A stretch of DNA of 59,280 bases, counting the filler, from Platydemus manokwari (lineage: Eukaryota), in assembly GCA_037951405.1 (NCBI GenBank). It is 5 parts of 5 records of this genome, joined end to end, with 100 filler letters (N's around TTAATTAATTAA, not from the genome) between each part and the next. Parts side by side here need not be neighbours in the genome. Positions count along the whole stretch, not along the records: positions 24,508 to 37,251 come from JBBMOY011982489.1; 4 more parts are not named here. One strand, 5' to 3'. Position 1 is the stretch's first letter. The number at the start of each line of letters is the position of its first letter. Below are positions 24,508 to 37,251 of this stretch, piece by piece. The position numbers and the translations under genes are program-made. The notes below the pieces were generated by a model. That model searched no databases, was not told the origin of the DNA, and saw only the letters and a list, made by a program, of their open reading frames with translations.

Positions 24508-24999
24508 GTGTGTGTTGGGTTTTGGTCTTATAAGTTATTATTCCCAACACCGGCGAGTCCTTTAAGATTGATCTGATTTGAATTCAAATCAACCCTCTCG
24601 ACTATCAGTCTATTATAAAAATATCTATTTACTATATCGAAATTATTATTAAAATAATAAATCAGAACGTAAGACAATTAAATTGAAATAATCCGCTATT
24701 GAAAACTATTACAGGTACACAATGTTCTATCAATTATAATTAAAAGTTATGAACAATCAATTTATTAATAAATCGGACTAAACAAATTATTTATTTACTT
24801 CTCAAACAAACCAGATTTTACCTCGTGCAAATTAGGGTAAGTGAGTGGCCGATTTGAATTTAACTAAACGACCTATATATTAAGATTTTAGACAATATAG
24901 ATTTAAATTTAGGTTTTTCAATTAAAATATAATTATTATCATAAAGTTTTTCCATTATTTCCTAAATAATTTCCTGTTTTATTAGCAAGAACTTGACTA

Positions 25000-25320
25000 A
25001 CTTCAATAATAAAATAAACTTTATAATTATATTTATTTACAATACTTTGTTATAAATTATTATCGTTTTTTTATTTCCATTATAATATTTTTAATATTCT
25101 ATTTAATATTCCTGTCAACAAACTTTTAACTTTATTCTCTGCATAACGCAAAAATAATTTCATTTTTTCAGTATATTTCGGAATTCTTTAATCTTTCTCT
25201 AAATAATTTTCAAAAGCTTCAACTAAAGTTTTTTTTTCATAATGTATAGGAATGCACGATCCATATCCTATAAATAAATCGGTAACAACCACAATAAATT
25301 TAGATCCACCACTAGTTTGT
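25000..25320 (-). mobile_element. Decayed retroviral-like (rve) integrase, Polinton/Ginger type
   Basis: Minus-strand TSGGSKFIVVVTDLFIGYGSCIPIHYEKKTLVEAFEN resembles the rve segment G.KY.L.V.D.FSKY.W..P......V..AF. Downstream KSFVDR resembles VER. Frameshifted. Confidence 0.6.
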
Positions 25321-25949
25321 CGACATTATTAAAAACAACTATCATATGAGTACTGTCTTTTTCAAACATTTTTGATTTTAGAAATTTCTTAATTTTTATA
25401 ATCATGGTGTAATGCTTGAGTTTATGCATCTTCATTGTGTAATTTTATATTATTAATTTTTGCCTCTTTCATCTGAATTGCCAAATTTTTTCTTCATGAG
25501 ATCCATTACCCTTCATAATTCTTTTCACGATAAGTTAGTTCACTTCATAAGTTAGATTAGTAATGTTATTCTATCGATGTATCATTTTAAATCCGTAACA
25601 TGTTTATCTTCTAAATCTTTAAAAATGATATGATCATATTGCATTGCAATTTCACATTTTGGAATTTGGATAATATCTAATTCTCTATTTTCGTTATAAT
25701 TTTTTATAATTCATAATTTTGTAAATATTTTTGAAGATTCCAACCACGCCAGGTAAAGATATGTACAGCATTAGTTCTATTAATTAAACTCATATTTTTA
25801 AATGATATTCCTCCGTATAACAACCATCAGATAATAATATCCCAAAAGAGAAAAACTCCTCGCAACACAAAATCATGAAATCAAATTTGCAAACGCCAAC
25901 ACAATTCTACCGGGTAATAATATCTATCTCCATAGATCTACGCTACAGG

Positions 25950-28900
25950 GTTGCTTTTGATCTACTGTGAGTGGAAAAAATGTCTGCAGATCTTTCGATA
26001 GAATTTTTCGCACTGTCTTGGTATAGGTAAAATCTGTGATGATTTAAGTACCGTCACACGAATATGGTTGATACCTGATAAAGAAAAAGAAATGTGCATG
26101 CTATGTACAGTCTATCACATGCCGTAAATCTGATCAGCTCTTTCATCTCTGCACTCATCTGATTTGCCGTTGTATAGCATGTCGCCTTGCATTCCGGTTG
26201 GATTTTTATAAATTTGCAAATAGGCCTCTTTATTTTTTAAAAATGTTTGGAATTCTTCCAGATTCTGTTAATGAATATAAGGAAACTTCTCCACCTTATA
26301 TCCCAACTTCATATGTGTTATGTCCCATGTTTTGTGTCCCTGCTCAATATCTTCCCAATAGTGGAGTTACATCAAATACTGATAGTGTAAATATTGATAT
26401 TCCAACTTTTCCTATTCCTATAATTAATTTTTCACCTCCAACAGCTTTGCAAAATCTCATCGAACAAAATGAAGTAGATCTTGATGCTGAACCAGTCTTG
26501 GTCCCTTCCAACTCTCCTATACATATATCGCTACGTCGGAGTCTTAATACTTTCAATTGTACAAGTATAAATCTTTATGTCTTCTCTTCTTGTCTTAATA
26601 GCTATGATCCCGATGATGTTGTTCTTTCAACTCCCTTGTCTAGCCCTTCTTCTGTAATAAATCTTGATACTGATCGACCTCCTTCAAATTACATAGATCT
26701 TACCGATAATGACTCCTCTGTCATTGAACCAACTACTCTACAAATTCCTTCTTGTTTTTTTCTAATACCTCTGTATATACTCTTTCCCTATTTCCGAAAA
26801 CCTCTCCAAATATTCCTGTCATTCCATTAACTAAACTTTTTAACAATTTTCCAAATTCCAGTACTAGTTTAATCGTGATCTCTACCTTACGTCTTAGATG
26901 TACATATTTTCCTCGAGAATATGTCTTTCCTTTCAAGTCTATCTATCATATTCCTAAACACTGGAGTAGAGACAATAAATTCAAGAATGGGGCTTTAAAA
27001 TTGAACGTTTTTGCGGTTTTCTCTGTGACCATGCAGCAATGAAAAGTCTTGTTGCAAAACACCAAACAGAACTTCAACCCAACGGTTCTGATGACAACAA
27101 TCTAAACCTTTCATTCACAAATAAAGGTCTTGACAGCAAATGACTCAGCGGCCAGCCATTGAGGCTTTTCTTCGAACTAAGCTTTTTTGGGTTGAAGAAA
27201 TAATCTTCATTAGATCTCTGCCTGCAATAGCACTGTCTCGTAAAGATTAAAAAACTTTCTACTCCATTTTCCTTTTCATAAACTCGCAAAATAGCGAATT
27301 GTTTTATGGCTGATCCATTGGGAAACTTGTCATTGGACTTTATATATAGCTGATTTCCCTCATCATCTTTCTTTTTCTATTGCCTAACTTTGCTCATAGA
27401 AATCTTATCTCTGGAGTAAGTTAGATGAACTATTTCACTACCTTGTTGCTCTTCTTGTAATGTAACCATCAAATAATCATATGTTGAAGGTTAACTTAGT
27501 CAAGTCAACGATTATGGCTGTGGTCTCTTTGTGATACAATATGCTCTTGATTTCTGTGATAATAGTCCGGACGTCCATTCTCCGGGAGGCGCATTACTCC
27601 ATCGCGATATCAATCACAACATTTCTAATACCCTAAGATATCAAGAAACTCATCCGCCATCTCCAACATCATGTCGTTCTTCTACTCATCCTCTCTTGCT
27701 CGAGACTATTCTTTTGCTTGACGGTGACGAATCTGATATTAGCTCTATCTTAAATAGTGGGGAACGTGCAATTCAGTATCTTCATCCTGATCGCTTTCGT
27801 GAAAAGAATCTACCTCTTTTGCCTTCTAAACTTCATTTAAAATCAGTTGTCAGGCCAGTCTTGCCTTCTGCGTCTCCACTATCTTTTCCGCCAATGGAAG
27901 ATATTATCGATCGTTTAAGCATTCCAGCTCCTGATCCTTTACCACCAAACTGGTCTGTTAATCTTCCATTCTTCCAAAACTCTGTCGTTCGTCAGAATGG
28001 AACTATTGAAAAAGATATGTAATTCTTTAGACTCTTTGTCTGATTCTGCTCCAGGCTCTTATGGTCTTAAATATAGCGACTGACGTGAAATTGACTACGA
28101 CTTTTCTTTTTTGAATTGGATAGTCTCTGGAAAACTTCTTCCACCAAATCAAAAGGCTCTACTTTCTCAAAATGGTTGTGCAGAACACAACACTTGTCTT
28201 TCAATTTTTAGAGAAAACTTCCGTCAAAACAAAGTCCTTTCCAATATCTGTTGGCTTGACTTACGTGAGGCGTTTCCTAGCGTTCCACATGAGCACATTT
28301 GGATAACTTTACAATGAATGGGTTGCAACGCTCACCTTATAAGTCCCATACAAGCACTCTACTGCTTTGACCTCAACATATCACTGCAATAAGCATACCA
28401 CGAAGCCGATCTCGATTCTTCGTGGTGTTAAACAAGATTACCTCTTGAGTTTGACTTTTTTTTTCTTTCAATAGACTTCTTATTTAGATTCTCTGCAGAC
28501 ATAGAAAAACTCTTAACAATCTGTGGGTTTCCATTTACTACGTTTACATATGCAGACAAAATGTCATAATTGGGGCCACAAGGTAGAACTTTCAACATAG
28601 ATTAACACATAATGTAAACAGTGTAAATACTGTACACATGACATTAAATGTTTCAAAAATTGGGTATCATGTTGGTAACCCGGATCACAAATATGAAATT
28701 AAAATTAGCAATCAATTCATCCCCTTTGTTGATGAGAATAATCTATATCAATACCTTGGGGTCCCTCTTAGAAAAACCAAAACGTTCCAGTATCATTTTT
28801 GAATTGAACAACATTCTTTCAGACTTTCATGGTATCATTGATTATCATCTCTGTCCTGCACAAAAAATAAATGCCTTTCAGACTTTTCTCCACTCACGTT

Positions 28901-29590
28901 TACCTTTCCATCTCCGTATTCGTGACGTAAATACACAACAACTTAGTTCACCTCATCGAATACAACCTCTTGGATTCGTACCAAGTGTCGGCTTCCATGA
29001 GAAAATTCGTGAACTAGCCAGGTGTATTAAAGGTAAATACTATGTACAAAAACTGATTAACAACTTCTTTTATGCTCCTCGTAAACTTAGAATTCTTGGA
29101 TTATACTTGCTCTCTATAACTACTTTGTACAGTCAATTACCGGTGCTTTCAAGTTTCTTAGGAGTTGTTATATATCCTTCAGAAATCTTATGATTGCTCA
29201 CTTGATTAATATAACCGATGCTCTTTTGTTTCCACCGAACTCTACAAATCTTGAACGAACTCTTGAAAGGCTGTCTGATAAACTTCTTTCTATTTATGGA
29301 CCTATGGTGGACTTATGGTGGTCCAATACCAGACATGCTGTTAATATAGCTCTAAAGGGAATCATTAAACCATAAATTTACTGGACAGAAGTTATCAAAG
29401 AACATCTAACATCCTTTTAATTTTAAATCTCCACAGTCCTCCTTTTCACCAGAGTTATGGCAATAGTTCCCAACACTGAGTTTTTAATCGTCTTCAGGAC
29501 ACATCAATGTTACAATCATAAAATCAGTAAAAATTAAAATCATCTCCAATTGTTATTATTATTGTACAGTTGTTTATATTGATTAAATAA
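25950..29590 (+). mobile_element. Decayed non-LTR retrotransposon of the RLE group (NeSL/R2-like) with Ulp1-like protease and RT; endonuclease domain not detected
   Basis: RT motifs appear in order across frameshifts and stops: DSAPGSYG, NQKALLSQNGCAEHN, ICWLDLREAFPSVPH, ILRGVKQ, FTYAD, YQYLGVP, LCPAQKINAFQTFLHSRL, FFYAPRKLRILGL. Upstream are Ulp1-like HWTLYIAD (27331) and QVNDYGCGLFV (27501). Boundaries are approximate. Confidence 0.88.
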
Positions 29591-29949
29591 ACATCACTTT
29601 TATCACTTCAATTATTTTATTATATATCTATATAATTCGAGTTAATACACACAACCTACGCTTAGAAAATTTGGAAAATATGCTGGAAATACGTCTAGAA
29701 TAACTCATGTTGTTATTTAGTATCCGGTTTAAGTTTGGGTGCTGAATTACAATCTGCTGGAATCAAATTAAAATATTAAAAAGAAGCATATAATAAATTA
29801 TTATTTTTGAAGAAAGAGTCAGATGAGAATAATTTGGAGTAACTGTTAATATAGTTATTAATTTAAATGATAATCACAAATGAAGGATATGTAAATTATA
29901 AAATATTAGATCAAATTGAAGTAAATAAGTTAATGGATGTGATAGGAAA

Positions 29950-30850
29950 TGAAGAAATTATTTCAAAAGATGTATATACAAATTTATTATGCCAAAATTG
30001 TTAGCATTTACTATTACCTTATAAAGTGGAGTAAAACTAATTCCTTAACATATGAAAGAATAAAAACGTTTAAAAATGTTTATGATAAAAAAGGCGTTTT
30101 AAAAGTATAATAACAATTTATCTGAGTTTGATTTAGATTATCCTGAAAATATGCATGAAAAAACAAGAACTTTCCTTTAACTCCAAACAAAGGAAAAATA
30201 AGTTATGATTTATAAGAATGATAAATAAATTGTGTTAGGAAATGGTTTAGATTTCTATTTAAATCAATGAAAGATCTTTAAAAAAAGGTTCATAGAAAAT
30301 TAGTTGTGTAAACTAAATATTTGCGAAGAAGCTATGTTGAATTTAATATTAAGCAAAAAATATAACAAAATCAAATAAAGATGAAATTGGAATAGAATTA
30401 GTTAAACTTTTGTTTCAAAATAGTTTTGACGGAAAACAATTGAAAATCCTAGAAAAAAGACGAAATATAAAAATTGTTAATTATGTAAAAGACTTTCAAA
30501 TTTTAAAATCATGTGCCAAGTTATATTAAGTCATAAATTTAATTTCATTATGTTTGCAATTTTAGAATATGCATAATTAGTTATTATAATATTAATATAC
30601 TAGAAAAAATTTATCTGGAAAATATAAAATACATTCCGCAAACATGAAAAGTTTGTTTATAGAATTTACATTATATGTGAATGAAAATAAAGTGGGTATT
30701 ATGACTGAATTAAAAAGTTGTATAATAAGTGAAATATTTCAATTTAAAAATATAAACCCAGATGAAATTATAAAAATAGGTTATTTGATAGAACCAACAG
30801 TATATCATATAGTTTCAGGTAAAACTTATTTCAAAAAATACAAAGGATAA
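29950..30850 (+). mobile_element. Decayed protein-primed family B DNA polymerase (Polinton/Maverick/adintovirus type)
   Basis: EFDLDYPENMHEK..FPLTP (30124), KKVHRKL...SYVEFN and LVKLLFQNSFDGK/TIENPRK.RNIKIV (~30400-30480) match the pPolB motifs LEVDLEYP..LHD...PLAPE, KVHR, YI.FN and KLMNNS.FGKT.EN.RKR. Many stops and frameshifts. Confidence 0.78.
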
Positions 30851-32324
30851 AAGTAGTAGCAGAGAACAATAAATAAATACGAATCTTAGAAATAAATCTT
30901 TTAACATCGTCATGTCCTACTCAAGACACCAGAAAAAATATAGTTAAAAATTCATTAAAAATGACTATGACATAAACAAAAAAAATAAATAAGTGAGAAA
31001 AATCATTGCTTATATATATTTCGATTTATATACAACATTATAAATAATTTTTCAAATATTTTTCGGTCGTTTAAGATCTTTTACAAGTTTATATACGATG
31101 TAGGAAAAACTCGTTAAGGTATGATTCCCATAAGTTCTACATTTATTCAAAAATCTTATAAAATGTTTCTCATTAATCTTTCCAGTCATCTAATCCCGGG
31201 ATAGCTGATCGATTAACGCATTAAAATGTCCATAAAATGTGTTCCTGATAAATTACATAAAAATCCAAACTAAAAGAAAAAACGGACTGTGGTCACATCA
31301 ATAAATACCAGAAATAATATTTTGAGCGTTTTTATTATTTGATTTATTTATATAGCGTACGTAAAGGAAACGCGTTCTCCTATACATTAACGGAGAAACT
31401 AGATACTAAAAATAATATTCAATTAAAACGCTCATCAATAATCAAAACTTATTAATTATAATAATACATTTTTACAACTTGTATCTATAAGCAATGATTT
31501 TTCTCAATTTTTTATTCTTTAGTTTATGTCATAACGACTCATAGCTATTATCCAACTGAAAAATTGATATAATTTTAACCATATTTTTTTCTGGTGTCTT
31601 GATTAGGACATGAAAACTTTTTTTGAAGGGAATATGCTCACTTATTGGTCTCCACTACTTCTTGTACATAAGAAATAATAATATTTGTGAAATAAATTTT
31701 AAGAAAGTTATTTATAGTAATGTAATTGTAAAATATATTAATAATGGCTATGAGAAACCACTCAACACTAAATAACCACGAAAATTAATAATATACATGA
31801 TTAAATATTTTCGCACAAACAAACCCTAATAAATTTTTGGAAATGAAATAAATAATTATTCTGTAAATATCAAATTAATTTTTGCACAAAAATTCTGGTA
31901 CAAAAGTTTCATACAAAATTTTAACGGCATAAAGTTTCAGCAACGTAAAAGTCGTATTCCGATAATTCGTTACAAAATTAATTGGACGAATTTTATTATT
32001 ATCATTGGATAATTTCCTTATCCGCTTTAATATTTATTATTTCAATTATTCTGAAAATAATTTTAAAATCCATGATGAGTAAATTTTTTATTATCATTAT
32101 AATAAACTGCACATCTACGGCTATTTTTAACTTTATGGTCTTTTAAAATTCAATACAAATATGTATGATAGATGATGGAATACAAACGTTACCAGGGAAA
32201 ACTATAAAATTGAAGTTATGTAAATATTATTTTGGAAATCGTCGTTTGATTTTTATTTACGTATAAAATTACTGAGCAGAATTTATAAGAGTAGTATAAA
32301 AAGATATTTTATAGAACATTTCTG

Positions 32325-32440
32325 AGTAGAGCGGTGGGGAAGCAGAAGGTGATGTGCATCAAGCCGCTGAGTGAACAGGCTTGGTGACAAATAGCCTTGT
32401 CATACTGCTTATAACTTTTCAAAGACTCGCGCTTATCTTG
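32325..32440 (-). mobile_element. Tiny GC-richer non-LTR RT fragment
   Basis: Minus-strand AV*QGYLSPSLFT resembles the RT motif GVRQG..LSP.LF. Local GC content is clearly above background. Confidence 0.4.
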
Positions 32441-32538
32441 TATGTATTATTTACATGATCTATAAGTGTACAAGTTTTATATAATATCTTTACAATTAAT
32501 AGTTATTTTTATTTCAATGATCATTAATTATTCTATAG

Positions 32539-32802
32539 TATCAATGTTGTGGTGGTACCAGCATCAATAATTTTTATGAAGATATGACAAGCACAGAAAC
32601 GAATATCCCAAGTAGCTGCTGTTTGCATTCGCCTAATGTTTGTAATATAATCACCTCTTCAATTTTTAAACCTACGTGTTTGGATATTTTATATCATAAT
32701 ATTTCTACTAATTATCATCTGGTCTTTACTTCTCTTGGTTTAATGGTATTTTTTCAATTTGTCGCGGCTTATTTCTTAAATTTGACCAGAACAGAAGAAT
32801 AA
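32539..32802 (+). CDS. Tetraspanin terminal exon (EC2 loop and TM4); upstream exons not found
   Basis: After acceptor ttctatag: YQCCGGTS...IPSSCC...C...TCLDIL...LVFTSLGLMVFFQFVAAYFL. It contains CCG, PxSCC, the last EC2 Cys and a TM4 with a polar Q. AATAAA lies shortly after the stop. Confidence 0.85.
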   Translation, partial: YQCCGGTSINNFYEDMTSTETNIPSSCCLHSPNVCNIITSSIFKPTCLDILYHNISTNYHLVFTSLGLMVFFQFVAAYFLNLTRTEE

Positions 32803-35800
32803 TTAAAATAGATTTATGAATAAAACGTATTTAATTTAAAGCATATGTGTATCTTTATTGTTTTCCTAAAGTTCAGTGAAGTGGAAACAAAATTTTTTTT
32901 TATTAAATTACATAATTTATAATTTTAAATCTAAATTTTTAGAAAAAAATAAATATCAATCACAAATTTTATTTGTCGATCTTTTATAGTAAATTTTTAA
33001 ATGACTCGATAATTAAAATTAATATGATATTATGAAAATTATTTTTTTAAGAAAAATAATAGAATTTTCAAGTTTTGTTTTAATATTCTATTTTAATTTA
33101 CTTCTTATTTGTAACTTTTCCAATTTATCTAAAAACAATCTAATAAACCTGATATATCTAAAATATTTTAACATTCAAATTCGAATTTCAATAAAACCAG
33201 ATATTTTAGAATATAATTAGTTTATCAGATTTATTTCTAAATTTTAATATTTATATAGAATTGATTTAACTCGAGGAAATAGAAAATTATAATTAAGTTA
33301 AGTGATTTATTAGTTGATTGGTAAAATAATATTTCAACAAATTGTGGATTGTGTTCTATAATTAGACAATTTTGGCCATATTAAAGTCTGTAGATAGGAA
33401 AAAAGTCATGGGTTCTAACTAACTTTTGTGTCTTTAATTGATGTTCCTAAAAGGATTATTTTAATTCTTATTAATAATCATGATACGAATTTTAAATGAA
33501 ACACAAAATATTCATTTCAATACCTCCTGACAAAAAGCCCATTGGCACCATCTTAAAATTATGACGAAAATCGTCGGTCAATGGAAAATCTAAAATCAAC
33601 TAGTTCAAGGCACACAAAAGCTGGGCACGAAAAGATAAACAAACAAATTAGCTTACTATAAGCATACAGTTCTTAAGTCATGTCAAATTCCGACAAAGAA
33701 ACACGAAAGGAAAATATTCTCGAAAATAATAACGATTAGGAACTCAAATTTATCGAACGAAATCAGTGAATATCATTAATAATCTTGCATTTATATGCAA
33801 CTTCTAATTATCTTGACCTCGGAACAGCTTAAATCATGTTGCTATGACACCATTTTTTTCTTATTTCTCATAAATGAGAATATTTGTTTCGAATTAACTC
33901 ATTTGCCTCTTGATATATTTTAGACACGTTAGCGTAACCTTGATCAATGTCTTCATGTCATACAATCTATTACATTCTAACTTATTTTTATAGTAAAATC
34001 GGCCTTGTTATTCACGATACCTCTAATTGCCGATTGCTCATCAAATCAAAATTATCATTTCTATCAAAACGGTTTTATGACACACAACCTGTTTATTTAG
34101 AAATATCAAATTTGTTTTATGAAATTATTAACACAAAATCACATAATTAATCTTCTAAGGTCAATGCAATTTGAAAAAAGATGCTATGACATAACTCTAT
34201 TCACCAAACAAATGTCTAATAAATCATGACAGTAAATATGTAGTGTGGCGACTATGAAAGCGGCGTCAATAGTCCAATATAATAAAAGTCTATTACTCTT
34301 TAGCAAATCACTATGCATTATGAACAATATGTATATTGTTGCTAAAACTTTTTCCACAATTTAATTTTAACAAAGGCAAAATAAAACTCGATATCAACTA
34401 CTAACAATAAACTGAGCAATTAACTGGCGAGAATTATTAACTAAATTCAAAGATAAGACCGTGATTAGTATTCCCCAATGTAGTTTTGTAGCTCAGAAAC
34501 GTTCACAAGAGGATTGGTAAACATGAAGTAACTGGTATTTCAAGAAAAAAATAAAATGTAAATGATGTTTACCTCTTATTTGAATTAGCTATAAATATCG
34601 TTTCTCGCACTTCCAGGCTAAACACTTCGGGTACAAACTTCAATCTTTAAATTTAAAGGAAAATTTTCAATGAGCAACTGCACATAAAAGACTGTCGGTG
34701 AAATTAATACGATTTGGCTTTGAACGAATTTTCGGATGATCTCTATCTCCTATCTCTGCTTTGATATGCATAATTTTTAACTAATGATTTCATTAAGTTA
34801 TTAATATACCATTGTTAATGTCGGAACTGGTTAATGTAATTCTCAACTGTCAGGATTTGTCTGTGAATTATCCACGAAATTAAAATTCTGATGAACTCAA
34901 AGATAAGAAACATAAGATAAAACAAATAAAATAAAAGATAAAACAAATGCAATTATGATTAAAAGAGTAAAATAAAAATGTGTTAATAGGTTATTACCTA
35001 AGGTAATGATAAATTCATAAAATAGAATTAAATTACTATTCATTAATATCTGACATTGAAAACAGAATGAAATGATAACTTATAAGGTTAAAATTAAATT
35101 ATTTAATAATGTTAATTTTCAAGGTTAATTATTTAGTACAAATTATAGCAATTTTTAGTTCATAATAACAGTTACTAGTTACTTTCGGTAACTGAAATAA
35201 ATAGATAGAACGTTCATATTATCTGTAGTATGCATGAACAACAGTATGTACACAAAGGGGGTGTGCATTGTTAAAATAAGTATAAAAAGAGCGAGTTAAC
35301 TTTTTATTTTCGTTATTCAACCAGAGACTGCAAAAAGGTAAGATGGTTCTTGTTAAAGTGGTTAGCCTTGCAACAAGTGTAGTTGTAGGAGATTAGAAGT
35401 ATTGTAGAAGGTATTTTATATTAGCAGTGAGTTAATTAGTAAAGTATTGTGCTATAGTGTGATATTAGCCAGGAATAGATTCTGAGTTATTGTATCATTA
35501 ACTTAACTTTATTCGGACTGGTGTTCCCAAGACGTTATATTCGGTGTAAATTATAATATAAATATATCTTACTCAGGGAGACGTATTTGTTTTTACTCAG
35601 TATACACCAGAATTAGAGTAGGAAACAGATTAGAAAAATAAGATCCAGCCGTTGAGTTAGAGCAGTTTTAAAAATTCTAAAGCTTGGGTTTCTGTTTTAC
35701 TTAATGATTTATTCTGTGGATTATTATCTCATTTATAGGGATTTAATTTTGCTACTTTTTAATTTATTTTAAATCCTGATGGAATTTTAAAATGGAATAA

Positions 35801-36225
35801 TTTTTCAGCCTTGACCTTTGAAGTTTTGACTGAACTAAACTTATTTACAATTTTTCATAAATAATATAAAATTATTGACACTTTTTCTTAAATAAATCAT
35901 TAATATTCACAGTTTTTTTATAAATAAAATTACCAAATATTTTTTCTGTCTAATAATTTATACATTAATATATTGTGATTATTAGAATGATTCGAATTTG
36001 ATTTGAGTTTGAATTTCGATGAAGTTCTAACAAGCAAATAACAATGTATTCAAATGAAAATAATAAATCAAGTAATATAATCAATTAAGTAGTTATATTA
36101 ACTGATTTCCGAAAAGAAAAGCAAAATTAATTCAATTTTAAATATTAAAAATGCAGATCCAAAAAGCTATGTTTAATAAATGATTAAATAACGACAAAAT
36201 CAAAAAATGCATAGATTATCAGTAG

Positions 36226-36391
36226 TACAGGGTTTTTTGAGTTTTAAAATAAATTTTGCACAATTTAAGATAATTATTTACATGAATAAGATAATTGTTT
36301 AAATAATATTTTCAAATAATATTTCTCTTATTCATGTAAATAATTATCATAAATTGTGCAAAATTTATTTTAAAACTTAAAAAACCCTATA
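36226..36391. mobile_element. Foldback MITE with ~63-bp inverted arms and TA-flanked CAGGG terminus (Tc1/mariner superfamily-like)
   Basis: 36229-36291 is the reverse complement of 36326-36388 with 2 mismatches. Ends read TA|CAGGGT...ACCCTA|TA. Confidence 0.8.
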
Positions 36392-37180
36392 AATAATTTA
36401 ATATTTTGATTTTAAGAGGGGCAATGTTAAATGATTTAAATACCCAAAATATGAAACTTTGAATAATTTACAAACCAACAATAAATAATGTGCTGAAAAA
36501 TAGCATATGGAATCGTGATAAAGCCATACAGAGAATGAGTATGCCATAAAGTCCAATTCAGTTGTGAAGTACAGTAAATTGACAAGTGCAAACGGTAATT
36601 ATCGTAAACACAACAGATGTGTAATTGATTGAGTATAGACGTATGGATGGTGAATATATCATTATGATGGGCTTCTGTCTAATAATTTCCATTAGTAACG
36701 AAACAAGTAGGACGAACAAACCTAGGTTTAAGAAATTTTATCAAACCAATAGAAAATACAATAAAATAACTTGTGACTTTTAAATTTCATTTTAACATTG
36801 AGCAAAATAAACGTTGGTATTTAAGTAATACTTGATTTGAATAAAATAAGCATATATCAAATCAAATTCATACATTGCAGAAGTAATTATCTGTGAATAC
36901 TAGAACCTCTCTCTCTTAATCACGTAATTCTACATCACATACTACTGTAGTAAATCGAACCAGAATTTTCTATATTGTGATTTTTTGTTTGTAAAAATAA
37001 ATACTAGTAAAGATTAACACTTGATTCTGGGGATTTATATTATTTGTTGCGTAAGAAATTGAAAAAATTGGAAATATAACTACAATCTGTAATCAATCAT
37101 TGGTCACTACTACACAAAGAATGGATAGATATACGAGACATAAGGGCTTGAATATTATTAATATATAATAATATTAACTA

Positions 37181-37251
<71 letters not shown>
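37181..37251 (+). repeat. (AAT)n microsatellite at a contig end
   Basis: About 23 perfect AAT units running into the gap. Confidence 0.97.

What the first reader, a model, noticed from the sequence alone, without database searches (positions are those of the whole stretch)
26072..27560. Retrotransposon carrying a possible SUMO toolkit: Cys/His finger, SIM-like cluster and Ulp1-like protease upstream of RT
Seen in sequence: ahead of the RT there is a Cys/His cluster (CAC..TCRKSDQLFHLCTHLICRCIAC...CPMFC). It is followed by a Ser/Pro/acidic region with repeated hydrophobic-acidic motifs (VNIDI, EVDLD, DDVVLS, VINLDTD, YIDLTDND). Then come Ulp1/C48-like remnants K*LSG, HWTLYIAD and QVNDYGCGLFV. 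Established: NeSL-clade elements can encode a Ulp1-like protease, [VI]-I-D-L-T is a SUMO-interacting motif, and SUMOylation is needed for transposon silencing in flies and nematodes. Inference: the intact ancestor bound SUMO-modified chromatin or silencing factors and deSUMOylated them. If the finger is a RING it could also act like a SUMO-targeted ubiquitin ligase. That would be a transposon-encoded counter-silencing module. I am not aware of this SIM-plus-finger combination being described.
Basis: partly seen in the sequence, partly recalled or inferred. Interest (0 to 1): 0.75.

Follow-up and report, generated by a model that had tools for sequence, protein, structure and literature searches.

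The report
Dead LINE copy with Ulp1-like protease
This is a broken, endonuclease-less copy of a rare NeSL/Utopia-type jumping gene that carried a Ulp1-like protease in front of its reverse transcriptase; the proposed SUMO-binding motifs and RING finger next to it are not supported, so it is a fairly ordinary member of a known kind.

Summary
The core call is right. Window ~25,940-29,530 (+) is a decayed non-LTR retrotransposon with a Ulp1/C48 protease remnant (27,134-27,575) directly upstream of RT (28,006-29,345). The His-box and Cys-box align to Pfam-verified C48+RVT_1 proteins (E 5e-9 and 1.5e-8). Those intact relatives keep His, Asp, Gln and Cys and end in a CCHC finger plus restriction-like endonuclease. 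This copy has lost the Asp and the whole endonuclease part.

26,072-26,827 belongs to the element: it lies between finger and protease remnants, has the same copy number, and its 252-codon open frame was never reached in 3,000 shuffles.

The "SUMO toolkit" reading is not supported. The Cys/His spacing fits C2H2 fingers (C-x2-C-x12-H-x3-H across one frameshift), as in NeSL/Utopia N-termini, not RING or PHD. SIM-like motifs are no more frequent than in composition-matched shuffles (P=0.13-0.33; clustering P~0.07). The ~300-aa linker that carries them is absent from the only full-length relative and matches nothing else. "K*LSG" is out of frame.

Verdict: new member of a known kind, with low-to-moderate interest. 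Whether the SIM-like motifs are conserved among copies could not be tested.

The parts
25940..26023 (+). Possible remnant of a first zinc finger (..TLQGC..NVCRSF..), interrupted by a stop
   Evidence: Weak tblastn match to finger 1 of L001 ORF1 (E=3.1), collinear with the other matches. Summed contig depth here is ~48, which is element level and not the ~1,500 of the repeat just upstream.
26093..26235 (+). Cys/His cluster: remnants of two C2H2-spaced fingers. C-x2-C at 26,095-26,106 in one frame, then 37 nt, then H-x3-H at 26,144-26,158 in the next frame. A second C-x2-C at 26,171-26,182 has F at +4, with Asn and Tyr where the two His would be.
   Evidence: Codon coordinates. Cys+His density P=0.02; the C2H2-spaced pattern occurs in 8.5% of shuffles. 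No Pfam finger, RING or PHD hit at E<=1. L001 has two C2H2-like fingers at the same position.
26236..26827 (+). Open-frame linker rich in Pro, Ser, Leu, Ile, Asn and Asp, specific to this lineage
   Evidence: Part of a 252-codon stop-free frame; 0 of 3,000 shuffles reach that length, and the other two frames have 13 and 26 stops. Composition. No homologue by word search, Atlas, 80 related loci or 9 related proteins. Summed depth of 70-106 equals the neighbouring element parts.
26618..26701 (+). Three clustered SIM-like cores: VVLS 26,618-26,629, VINL 26,654-26,665, YIDL 26,690-26,701
   Evidence: Pattern scan. Count not above shuffles (P=0.33); clustering P=0.07. No PDB SIM match.
26828..27133 (+). 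Rest of the finger-to-protease spacer; coding frame unclear, with stops in all frames
   Evidence: No hit in related loci or proteins.
27134..27575 (+). Ulp1/C48 protease remnant. N-terminal helix region 27,149-27,250; His-box 27,256-27,384 (His codon 27,331-27,333, in-frame stop 27,292-27,294); the clade's Asp position reads Ala at 27,382-27,384, followed by a stop at 27,385-27,387; Cys-box from 27,501 (Gln 27,501-27,503, Cys 27,519-27,521, and the Asp before the Cys is now Gly)
   Evidence: tblastn to P0008, P0006 and L001. Pfam Peptidase_C48 in those relatives: E=2e-8, 4e-12 and 8e-7. Local HMM, alignment A2, bases.
27576..28005 (+). Protease-to-RT linker and the N-terminal extension of RT
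   Evidence: Aligned to P0008 residues 95-248 and L001 126-310.
28006..29345 (+). Reverse transcriptase with thumb, heavily broken. YADD reads YADK, and there is an 11-nt tandem duplication at 29,297-29,321.
   Evidence: tblastn to P0008 368-712 at E=2e-31, crossing 9 stops in one frame, and to 702-780. RVT_1 in the relatives at E~1e-29. TRF result.
29346..29530 (+). Last stretch of element-like composition. The CCHC finger and restriction-like endonuclease (~300 aa in relatives) are missing.
   Evidence: GC content drops at ~29,500. There is no tblastn match to the relatives' C-termini anywhere in the piece.

Best explanation
Window ~25,940-29,530 (+) is a dead copy of a single-ORF, restriction-like-endonuclease (RLE) type non-LTR retrotransposon of the NeSL/Utopia kind. 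The intact layout is N-terminal C2H2-type zinc fingers, then a Ulp1-like C48 cysteine protease, then reverse transcriptase, then a CCHC finger plus RLE. Shown: the protease and RT remnants are homologous to intact C48+RVT_1+CCHC/RLE proteins. The copy carries many frameshifts and stops, has lost the catalytic Asp, and lacks the whole CCHC/RLE part. Several other copies exist in the same genome, with the 3'-enriched depth typical of 5'-truncated LINEs. Inferred: the Cys/His cluster is the remains of the DNA-binding fingers that such elements use to recognise their target, not a RING. The 26,236-27,133 stretch was a coding, probably disordered spacer specific to this lineage, and its SIM-like motifs are what its Ile/Leu/Val/Asp/Ser-rich composition produces by chance. 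In the active ancestor the C48 domain most likely removed a ubiquitin-like modifier (SUMO-type) from host or element proteins during integration. I give that about 0.5, against about 0.35 for cleavage of the element's own polyprotein. Neither has been tested for any LINE. This copy does nothing now.
For: GC content is 0.34-0.42 in the block against 0.19-0.29 in the flanks. An HMMER search of 1.84e9 proteins with the RT-thumb piece found 9 relatives. P0006 and P0008 have Peptidase_C48 plus RVT_1, and alignment A1 shows C-x2-C..H..C followed by RPD..D-x-K at their C-termini. tblastn of P0008 onto the window gives a His-box at E=5e-9, a Cys-box at E=1.5e-8 and RT at E=2e-31, all collinear. L001 is full length: its ORF1 has two C2H2-like fingers, followed in the same frame after one stop by C48 (E=8e-7), RVT_1, CCHC and RLE. 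Contig depth is ~15 for single-copy sequence, 43-106 over 26,070-27,460 and 137-325 over 28,158-29,549. The C2H2 spacing holds across one frameshift. The open frame is not chance. SIM-like motifs are at chance level. In L001 the gap from finger 2 to C48 is ~27 aa, against ~300 aa here. PMC4640811 describes N-terminal fingers plus an N-terminal Ulp1-like protease plus RT plus finger/RLE for NeSL and Utopia-1_TSP.
Against: Pfam does not call any finger in the window or in L001 ORF1, and a C2H2-spaced pattern arises in 8.5% of shuffles, so the finger type rests on spacing and position. RT phylogeny against named NeSL/Utopia/R2 references was not possible, and no spliced-leader, U2 or other RNA-gene target flanks this copy. 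The three SIM-like cores do cluster (P=0.07), and 756 nt stay open in a copy with roughly one lesion per 200 nt elsewhere, which a plain spacer does not obviously explain. The Pfam C48 matches cover only profile positions ~80-204 of 217.
Confidence: 0.8

Rival explanations
1. One reading: the intact ancestor carried a SUMO toolkit. A tandem SIM array, with or without a RING-like finger, brought the Ulp1-like protease to SUMO-modified chromatin or silencing factors, so that the element could strip SUMO and escape silencing.
For: The C48 domain is real and the clade's triad is intact in relatives. Three cores of the psi-psi-x-psi type with acidic or Ser flanks lie within 45 aa (clustering P=0.07). 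The linker was coding sequence and belongs to the element. From my own knowledge, not tested here: cellular SUMO proteases (SENP6/7, Ulp2) and RNF4 use such arrays, and YIDLTDNDSSVIE resembles the RNF4 SIM2-3 stretch.
Against: The motif count equals the shuffle expectation (P=0.13-0.33), and the relatives' whole proteins show 1.5-3.3 such motifs per 252 aa. The linker is absent from L001 and has no homologue anywhere. The finger spacing does not fit RING or PHD, and Pfam finds neither. One contig appears to skip 26,628-26,915, which contains two of the three cores (short anchor, so weak).
Confidence: 0.08
2. The C48 domain is a self-processing protease. It cuts the single long translation product into finger, protease and RT-endonuclease parts, as adenovirus-type and Polinton Ulp1-like proteases mature their own proteins. 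The long linker is a spacer holding a cleavage site.
For: The protease sits between the DNA-binding and enzymatic modules of one ORF. Only the catalytic core of the C48 profile is matched, and the N-terminal part that contacts SUMO in Ulp1 is abbreviated. Ulp1-like maturation proteases in Polintons and dsDNA viruses are from my own knowledge (PMC4405056 was listed but not read).
Against: No conserved Gly-Gly site was looked for systematically. R2-type proteins work as one polypeptide (own knowledge). Ulp1 domains also occur in DNA transposases, which have no polyprotein to cut (PMC2836005).
Confidence: 0.35
3. The Cys/His cluster and what follows it are the C-terminal CCHC finger and RLE of a second, 5'-truncated copy lying head-to-tail upstream, not the N-terminus of this copy.
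For: blastp of the 252-aa piece to P0006 residues 910-948 (CRRC..H..C.C..RHN region) gives E=0.054. The RLE is missing at this copy's 3' end.
Against: A profile of four intact CCHC-RLE C-termini scores the piece at E=6.7 (0.6 bits), no better than random frames. Depth over 26,070-26,940 is lower than over RT, the opposite of what a 3' end would show.
Confidence: 0.04

Closest known systems
NeSL families of nematodes and Utopia-1_TSP (NeSL clade, RLE-type non-LTR retrotransposons; Kojima & Jurka 2015, PMC4640811)
   Same: One ORF. Zinc finger(s) at the N-terminus, a Ulp1-like cysteine protease upstream of RT, and a C-terminal finger plus restriction-like endonuclease (seen here in the relatives P0006, P0008 and L001).
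   Different: No spliced-leader or U2 snRNA target at this copy. There is a ~300-aa extra linker between fingers and protease. This copy lacks the endonuclease. The host is unknown and the RT has not been placed on a tree, so clade membership is inferred from architecture only.
Ulp1/SENP proteases (Pfam PF02902, Peptidase_C48)
   Same: The relatives match PF02902 above its cut-off and align His (..HW..), Asp (LLDP), Gln and Cys (Q-x-N-x-D-C-G). The window keeps the His, Gln and Cys motifs.
   Different: Only profile positions ~80-204 are matched. The window copy has Ala plus a stop at the Asp position, and further stops and frameshifts. No activity or substrate is known.
Ulp1 domains of Ginger1 and Mutator DNA transposases, including Ginger1-9_HM with Ulp1+PHD (Bao, Kapitonov & Jurka 2010, PMC2836005)
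   Same: A transposon-encoded Ulp1 domain, sometimes next to a finger. Those authors already proposed that SUMO/ubiquitin pathways are involved in transposition.
   Different: Those are cut-and-paste DNA transposons with the protease C-terminal to the transposase. Here it is a LINE with the protease N-terminal to RT, and the finger is C2H2-like, not PHD.
SIM arrays of cellular SUMO proteases and SUMO-targeted ligases (SENP6/7, Ulp2, RNF4; own knowledge, not tested here)
   Same: Several short hydrophobic cores with acidic or Ser flanks in a disordered region beside a catalytic domain.
   Different: No enrichment over composition, no conservation, no RING, and no binding data.

Membership tests
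RLE-type non-LTR retrotransposon, NeSL/Utopia kind | Reverse transcriptase domain of the non-LTR type | tested here: met
   Window 28,114-29,157 aligns to P0008 RT at E=2e-31. The relatives hit RVT_1 at E~1e-29. The window's own pieces reach only E=0.11 in Pfam.
RLE-type non-LTR retrotransposon, NeSL/Utopia kind | C-terminal CCHC finger plus restriction-like endonuclease (PD..D/E-x-K) | tested here: not met
   Absent from this copy. Present by motif in P0006, P0007, P0008 and L001, so the family has it and this copy has lost it. No curated model was available to confirm the RLE.
RLE-type non-LTR retrotransposon, NeSL/Utopia kind | One to three N-terminal zinc fingers | tested here: inconclusive
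   C-x2-C-x12-H-x3-H holds only across a frameshift, and the second finger has Asn/Tyr at the His positions. The pattern occurs in 8.5% of shuffles. There is no Pfam hit. L001 has two fingers by inspection.
RLE-type non-LTR retrotransposon, NeSL/Utopia kind | Ulp1-like protease N-terminal to RT (NeSL, Utopia-1_TSP) | tested here: met
   the published description is.
RLE-type non-LTR retrotransposon, NeSL/Utopia kind | RT groups with NeSL/Utopia on a tree | not testable with these tools
   No named reference sequences (Repbase) were on hand.
RLE-type non-LTR retrotransposon, NeSL/Utopia kind | Insertion into a spliced-leader or U2 snRNA gene | tested here: not met
   Rfam at E<=1 and ARAGORN find no RNA gene in 24,508-37,251.
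Peptidase C48 (Ulp1/SENP) | His-Asp-Cys triad with the oxyanion Gln | tested here: not met
   Window: His 27,331, Gln 27,501 and Cys 27,519 are present, but the Asp position reads Ala and is followed by a stop. The intact relatives have all four, with Pfam PF02902 above its cut-off.
Peptidase C48 (Ulp1/SENP) | Cleaves SUMO or another Ubl from substrates | not testable with these tools
   This needs an enzyme assay. The AlphaFold model of L001's domain had pLDDT 48 and was not usable.
SUMO-interacting motif array | psi-psi-x-psi or psi-x-psi-psi core with acidic or Ser flank | tested here: met
   VVLS, VINL and (with Tyr at the first position) YIDL at 26,618-26,701. VNIDI and EVDLD do not fit a core.
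SUMO-interacting motif array | More motifs than composition predicts, or conserved in relatives | tested here: not met
   P=0.13-0.33 for the count and 0.07 for clustering. The linker is absent from L001 and has no homologue. Conservation among this genome's own copies could not be tested.
RING / PHD finger (SUMO-targeted ligase reading) | C3HC4 or C4HC3 ligand spacing and a profile match | tested here: not met
   The spacing fails at the C5-x2-C6 and C7-x2-C8 pairs, by inspection of the residues listed. There is no Pfam RING or PHD hit at E<=1.

The most novel reading that the evidence does not exclude
The ~300-aa linker that this lineage inserted between its fingers and its Ulp1-like protease carries a genuine tandem SIM array (26,606-26,740). 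That array would aim the protease at poly-SUMO chains, giving a LINE its own means of undoing SUMO-dependent transposon silencing.
Probability: 0.08. Interest if true: 0.75.

Novelty: new member of a known kind. Interest (0 to 1): 0.27.

Why it matters
What the Ulp1-like protease of NeSL-type LINEs, and of Ginger and Mutator transposases, actually does is still unknown. This lineage is thinly sampled: only 9 relatives turned up among 1.84 billion protein representatives, and three naturally intact C48+RT proteins (P0006, P0008, L001) are now identified that could be expressed and assayed. If the host is not a nematode, the find would extend the known range of protease-bearing NeSL/Utopia elements. 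The specific locus is a dead copy, and the SIM/RING idea has no support beyond pattern resemblance.

Tried and rejected
1. Pfam on ten stop-free window pieces: only RVT_1 at E=0.11.
2. PDB sequence search with the Cys-box piece and with the SIM stretch: nothing relevant.
3. Atlas with the 252-aa piece: no usable hit. Atlas with P0008: one 50-member RVT_1 + C48 cluster, taxa not recorded, so a lead only.
4. Word searches with the 252-aa piece, the RT-thumb piece and P0008 residues 1-330: no relatives, or self only.
5. Rfam and tRNA scans for a target gene: none.
6. The idea that the Cys/His cluster is a C-terminal CCHC-RLE from an upstream copy: suggested by blastp at E=0.054, rejected by a profile at E=6.7.
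7. L003's 'DVDIDDVVLS' as a conserved counterpart of 'DPDDVVLS': the alignment is E=3.5, and L003 has neither fingers nor C48 and is a distant RT.
8. AlphaFold of L001's C48 domain with a 5-row alignment: pLDDT 48, so no fold search was run.
9. Pfam on the high-copy repeat at 25,191-25,906, minus-strand pieces: nothing.
10. The 'loose ends' at 29,302 as a breakpoint: explained by an 11-nt tandem duplication.
12. PMC1460889, the original NeSL-1 paper, is not held.
13. Complex prediction was not used, because SUMO is not among the references offered.
Full report
**What is in the window**

The piece (24,508-37,251) is AT-rich DNA of 19-29% GC. It contains one block of 34-42% GC between about 26,000 and 29,500.
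- The Cys/His cluster and all five hydrophobic-acidic motifs lie in a single stop-free stretch, 26,072-26,827 (252 codons).
- 'K*LSG', 'HWTLYIAD' and 'QVNDYGCGLFV' lie in two other frames.
- The RT is split over all three frames.

Pfam on ten stop-free pieces finds only RVT_1 at E=0.11, so the window cannot be classified from its own pieces.

**Relatives**

Word searches found nothing. An exhaustive HMMER search of 1.84 billion representatives with the RT-thumb piece found only nine proteins.
- P0006 and P0008 have Peptidase_C48 (E=4e-12 and 2e-8) directly followed by RVT_1.
- With P0007, they end in a C-x2-C..H..C finger followed by RPD..D-x-K, the signature of the restriction-like endonuclease of R2/NeSL-type LINEs.
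- A metagenome scan gave L001, a full-length relative. Its ORF1 has a Ser/Thr/Lys-rich N-terminus and two C2H2-like fingers. After one stop, in the same frame, come C48 (E=8e-7), RVT_1, CCHC and RLE.

This is the architecture that Kojima & Jurka describe for nematode NeSL families and Utopia-1_TSP (PMC4640811).

**Mapping onto the window**

P0008 aligns collinearly:
- residues 7-46 to 27,256-27,375 (His-box, E=5e-9);
- residues 95-248 to 27,501-27,941 (Cys-box and linker, E=1.5e-8);
- residues 368-712 to 28,114-29,157 (RT, E=2e-31, crossing nine stops);
- residues 702-780 to 29,118-29,339.

A local HMM of the three intact C48 domains finds the window's His-box (E=1e-7) and Cys-box (E=2e-4). 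Among the 80 fetched loci it finds only L001. In alignment A2 the clade's catalytic residues are His in NHWL, Asp in LLDP, and Gln and Cys in Q-x-N-x-D-C-G.

The window keeps His (27,331), Gln (27,501) and Cys (27,519). At the Asp position it reads Ala (27,382-27,384) followed by a stop, and the Asp before the Cys is Gly. The start of the domain follows a third frame: 27,149-27,250 reads RPAIEAFLR.., matching L001's GRVIELYIRY...

Nothing in the piece matches the relatives' last ~300 residues, so this copy lacks CCHC and RLE.

**Is 26,072-26,830 part of the element?**

Yes, on four grounds:
- It lies between finger remnants and the protease on the same strand.
- It shares the element's GC content.
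- Summed contig depth is 70-106, against about 15 for single-copy DNA. That matches the neighbouring 5' parts (43-106), while RT reaches 137-325, the usual gradient of 5'-truncated LINE copies.
- The 252-codon open frame was reached in none of 3,000 dinucleotide shuffles (mean 68, maximum 179), and the other two frames hold 13 and 26 stops.

**The finger**

Cys+His density (9 in 30 aa) is modestly unusual (P=0.02). The spacing is informative.
- C-x2-C at 26,095-26,106 in one frame and H-x3-H at 26,144-26,158 in the next are 37 nt apart. That is twelve codons plus one base, so C-x2-C-x12-H-x3-H across a single frameshift.
- A second C-x2-C (26,171-26,182) has Phe at +4, and Asn and Tyr stand exactly where the two His would be.
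- Such a pattern appears in 8.5% of shuffles and Pfam calls no finger. The C2H2 reading therefore rests on spacing plus position, and I put it at about 0.65-0.7.
- A RING does not fit: two of the four ligand pairs have the wrong spacing, and there is no RING or PHD hit.
- A weak resemblance to the relatives' C-terminal CCHC finger (E=0.054) did not survive a profile test (E=6.7).

**The SIM-like motifs**

Three cores fit a SIM pattern with acidic or Ser flanks: VVLS (26,618), VINL (26,654) and YIDL (26,690). VNIDI and EVDLD do not. The linker is 13% Pro, 13% Ser, 11% Leu, 9% Ile, 7% Val and 7% Asp, and that composition generates such motifs readily.
- Strict rule: 2 observed against 0.63 expected (P=0.13).
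- Lenient rule: 3 against 2.04 (P=0.33).
- Three within 45 aa: P=0.07.
- The relatives' whole proteins carry 1.5-3.3 lenient motifs per 252 aa.

The linker has no homologue in any search. In L001 the distance from finger 2 to the protease is about 27 aa instead of about 300. One contig seems to skip 26,628-26,915 (short anchor, so weak).

**Function**

This copy is dead. For the active ancestor, target-primed reverse transcription by RT and RLE, with finger-mediated target recognition, follows from established knowledge of R2/NeSL-type elements.

What the C48 domain does is not known for any LINE. Ulp1 domains also occur in Ginger1 and Mutator transposases, once together with a PHD finger. Bao et al. 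already proposed that SUMO and ubiquitin pathways are involved in transposition (PMC2836005). Because DNA transposases have no polyprotein to process, I slightly favour a modifier-removing role (about 0.5) over self-processing (about 0.35). An AlphaFold model of L001's domain was too poor to use (pLDDT 48).

**Novelty and verdict**

A full-text search found no paper combining SIMs with a transposon Ulp1, but the evidence here does not establish such a module. The finding is a new, decayed member of a known kind. It belongs to a rarely sampled C48-bearing RLE LINE lineage. An Atlas cluster of 50 RVT_1 + C48 proteins, with taxa unrecorded, is a lead only.

The host organism is coded and unknown. 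If it is not a nematode, the taxonomic range of protease-bearing NeSL/Utopia elements would widen.

Noticed in passing
window 25,200-25,373 and 25,548-25,895: These two stretches lie immediately 5' of the element and have summed contig depth of ~1,400-1,750 against ~15 for single-copy DNA, so roughly 100 copies. A low-copy 174-bp stretch separates them. This is a different, unidentified repeat: there is no Pfam hit on the minus-strand open pieces and no Rfam hit.
   Followed up: partly
window 25,458 / 29,609: One low-depth contig (4.1) joins 25,458 to 29,609 with 9 other letters between them. If real, this could be an empty-site or alternative arrangement, and it would place the insertion bounds at 25,459-29,608, wider than the recognisable element.
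   Followed up: no
window 26,072-26,827: 756 nt stay open in one frame, while the 2.2 kb downstream shows about eight frame changes and several stops, and the finger region upstream shows at least four lesions in 300 nt. The strand is poor in G (12%), which lowers the chance of stops but does not explain the lack of frameshifts.
   Followed up: partly
window 25,200-30,400 (differences between copies): Among the differences between this copy and the other copies, C>T (196) and G>A (128) dominate. This is compatible with deamination-type decay or AT-biased mutation.
   Followed up: no
window 29,297-29,321: An 11-nt unit (TGGACCTATGG) is repeated 2.3 times inside the RT C-terminal region. It explains why nine contigs lose alignment at 29,302.
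   Followed up: yes
window 36,226-36,391: A near-perfect hairpin: 74-nt arms, 92% complementary, with an 18-nt loop. It could be a foldback or MITE-like element.
   Followed up: no
window 30,910-31,613: Nested inverted repeats (43-nt arms at 84% and 39-nt arms at 90%) span about 700 bp, resembling a small terminal-inverted-repeat element.
   Followed up: no
window 37,151-37,251: An (AAT)n microsatellite of about 33 units runs to the edge of the piece.
   Followed up: no
L001 84-4,223: ORF1 (fingers) and ORF2 (C48-RT-CCHC-RLE) are in the same frame, separated by a single stop at 762-764 just before the start of the C48 domain. L001 is therefore one long ORF with one interruption, not a two-ORF element.
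   Followed up: partly
L003 105-2,126: A distantly related RT element whose N-terminus is a Ser/Asp-rich acidic region (including DVDIDDVVLS) with no finger and no C48.
   Followed up: partly
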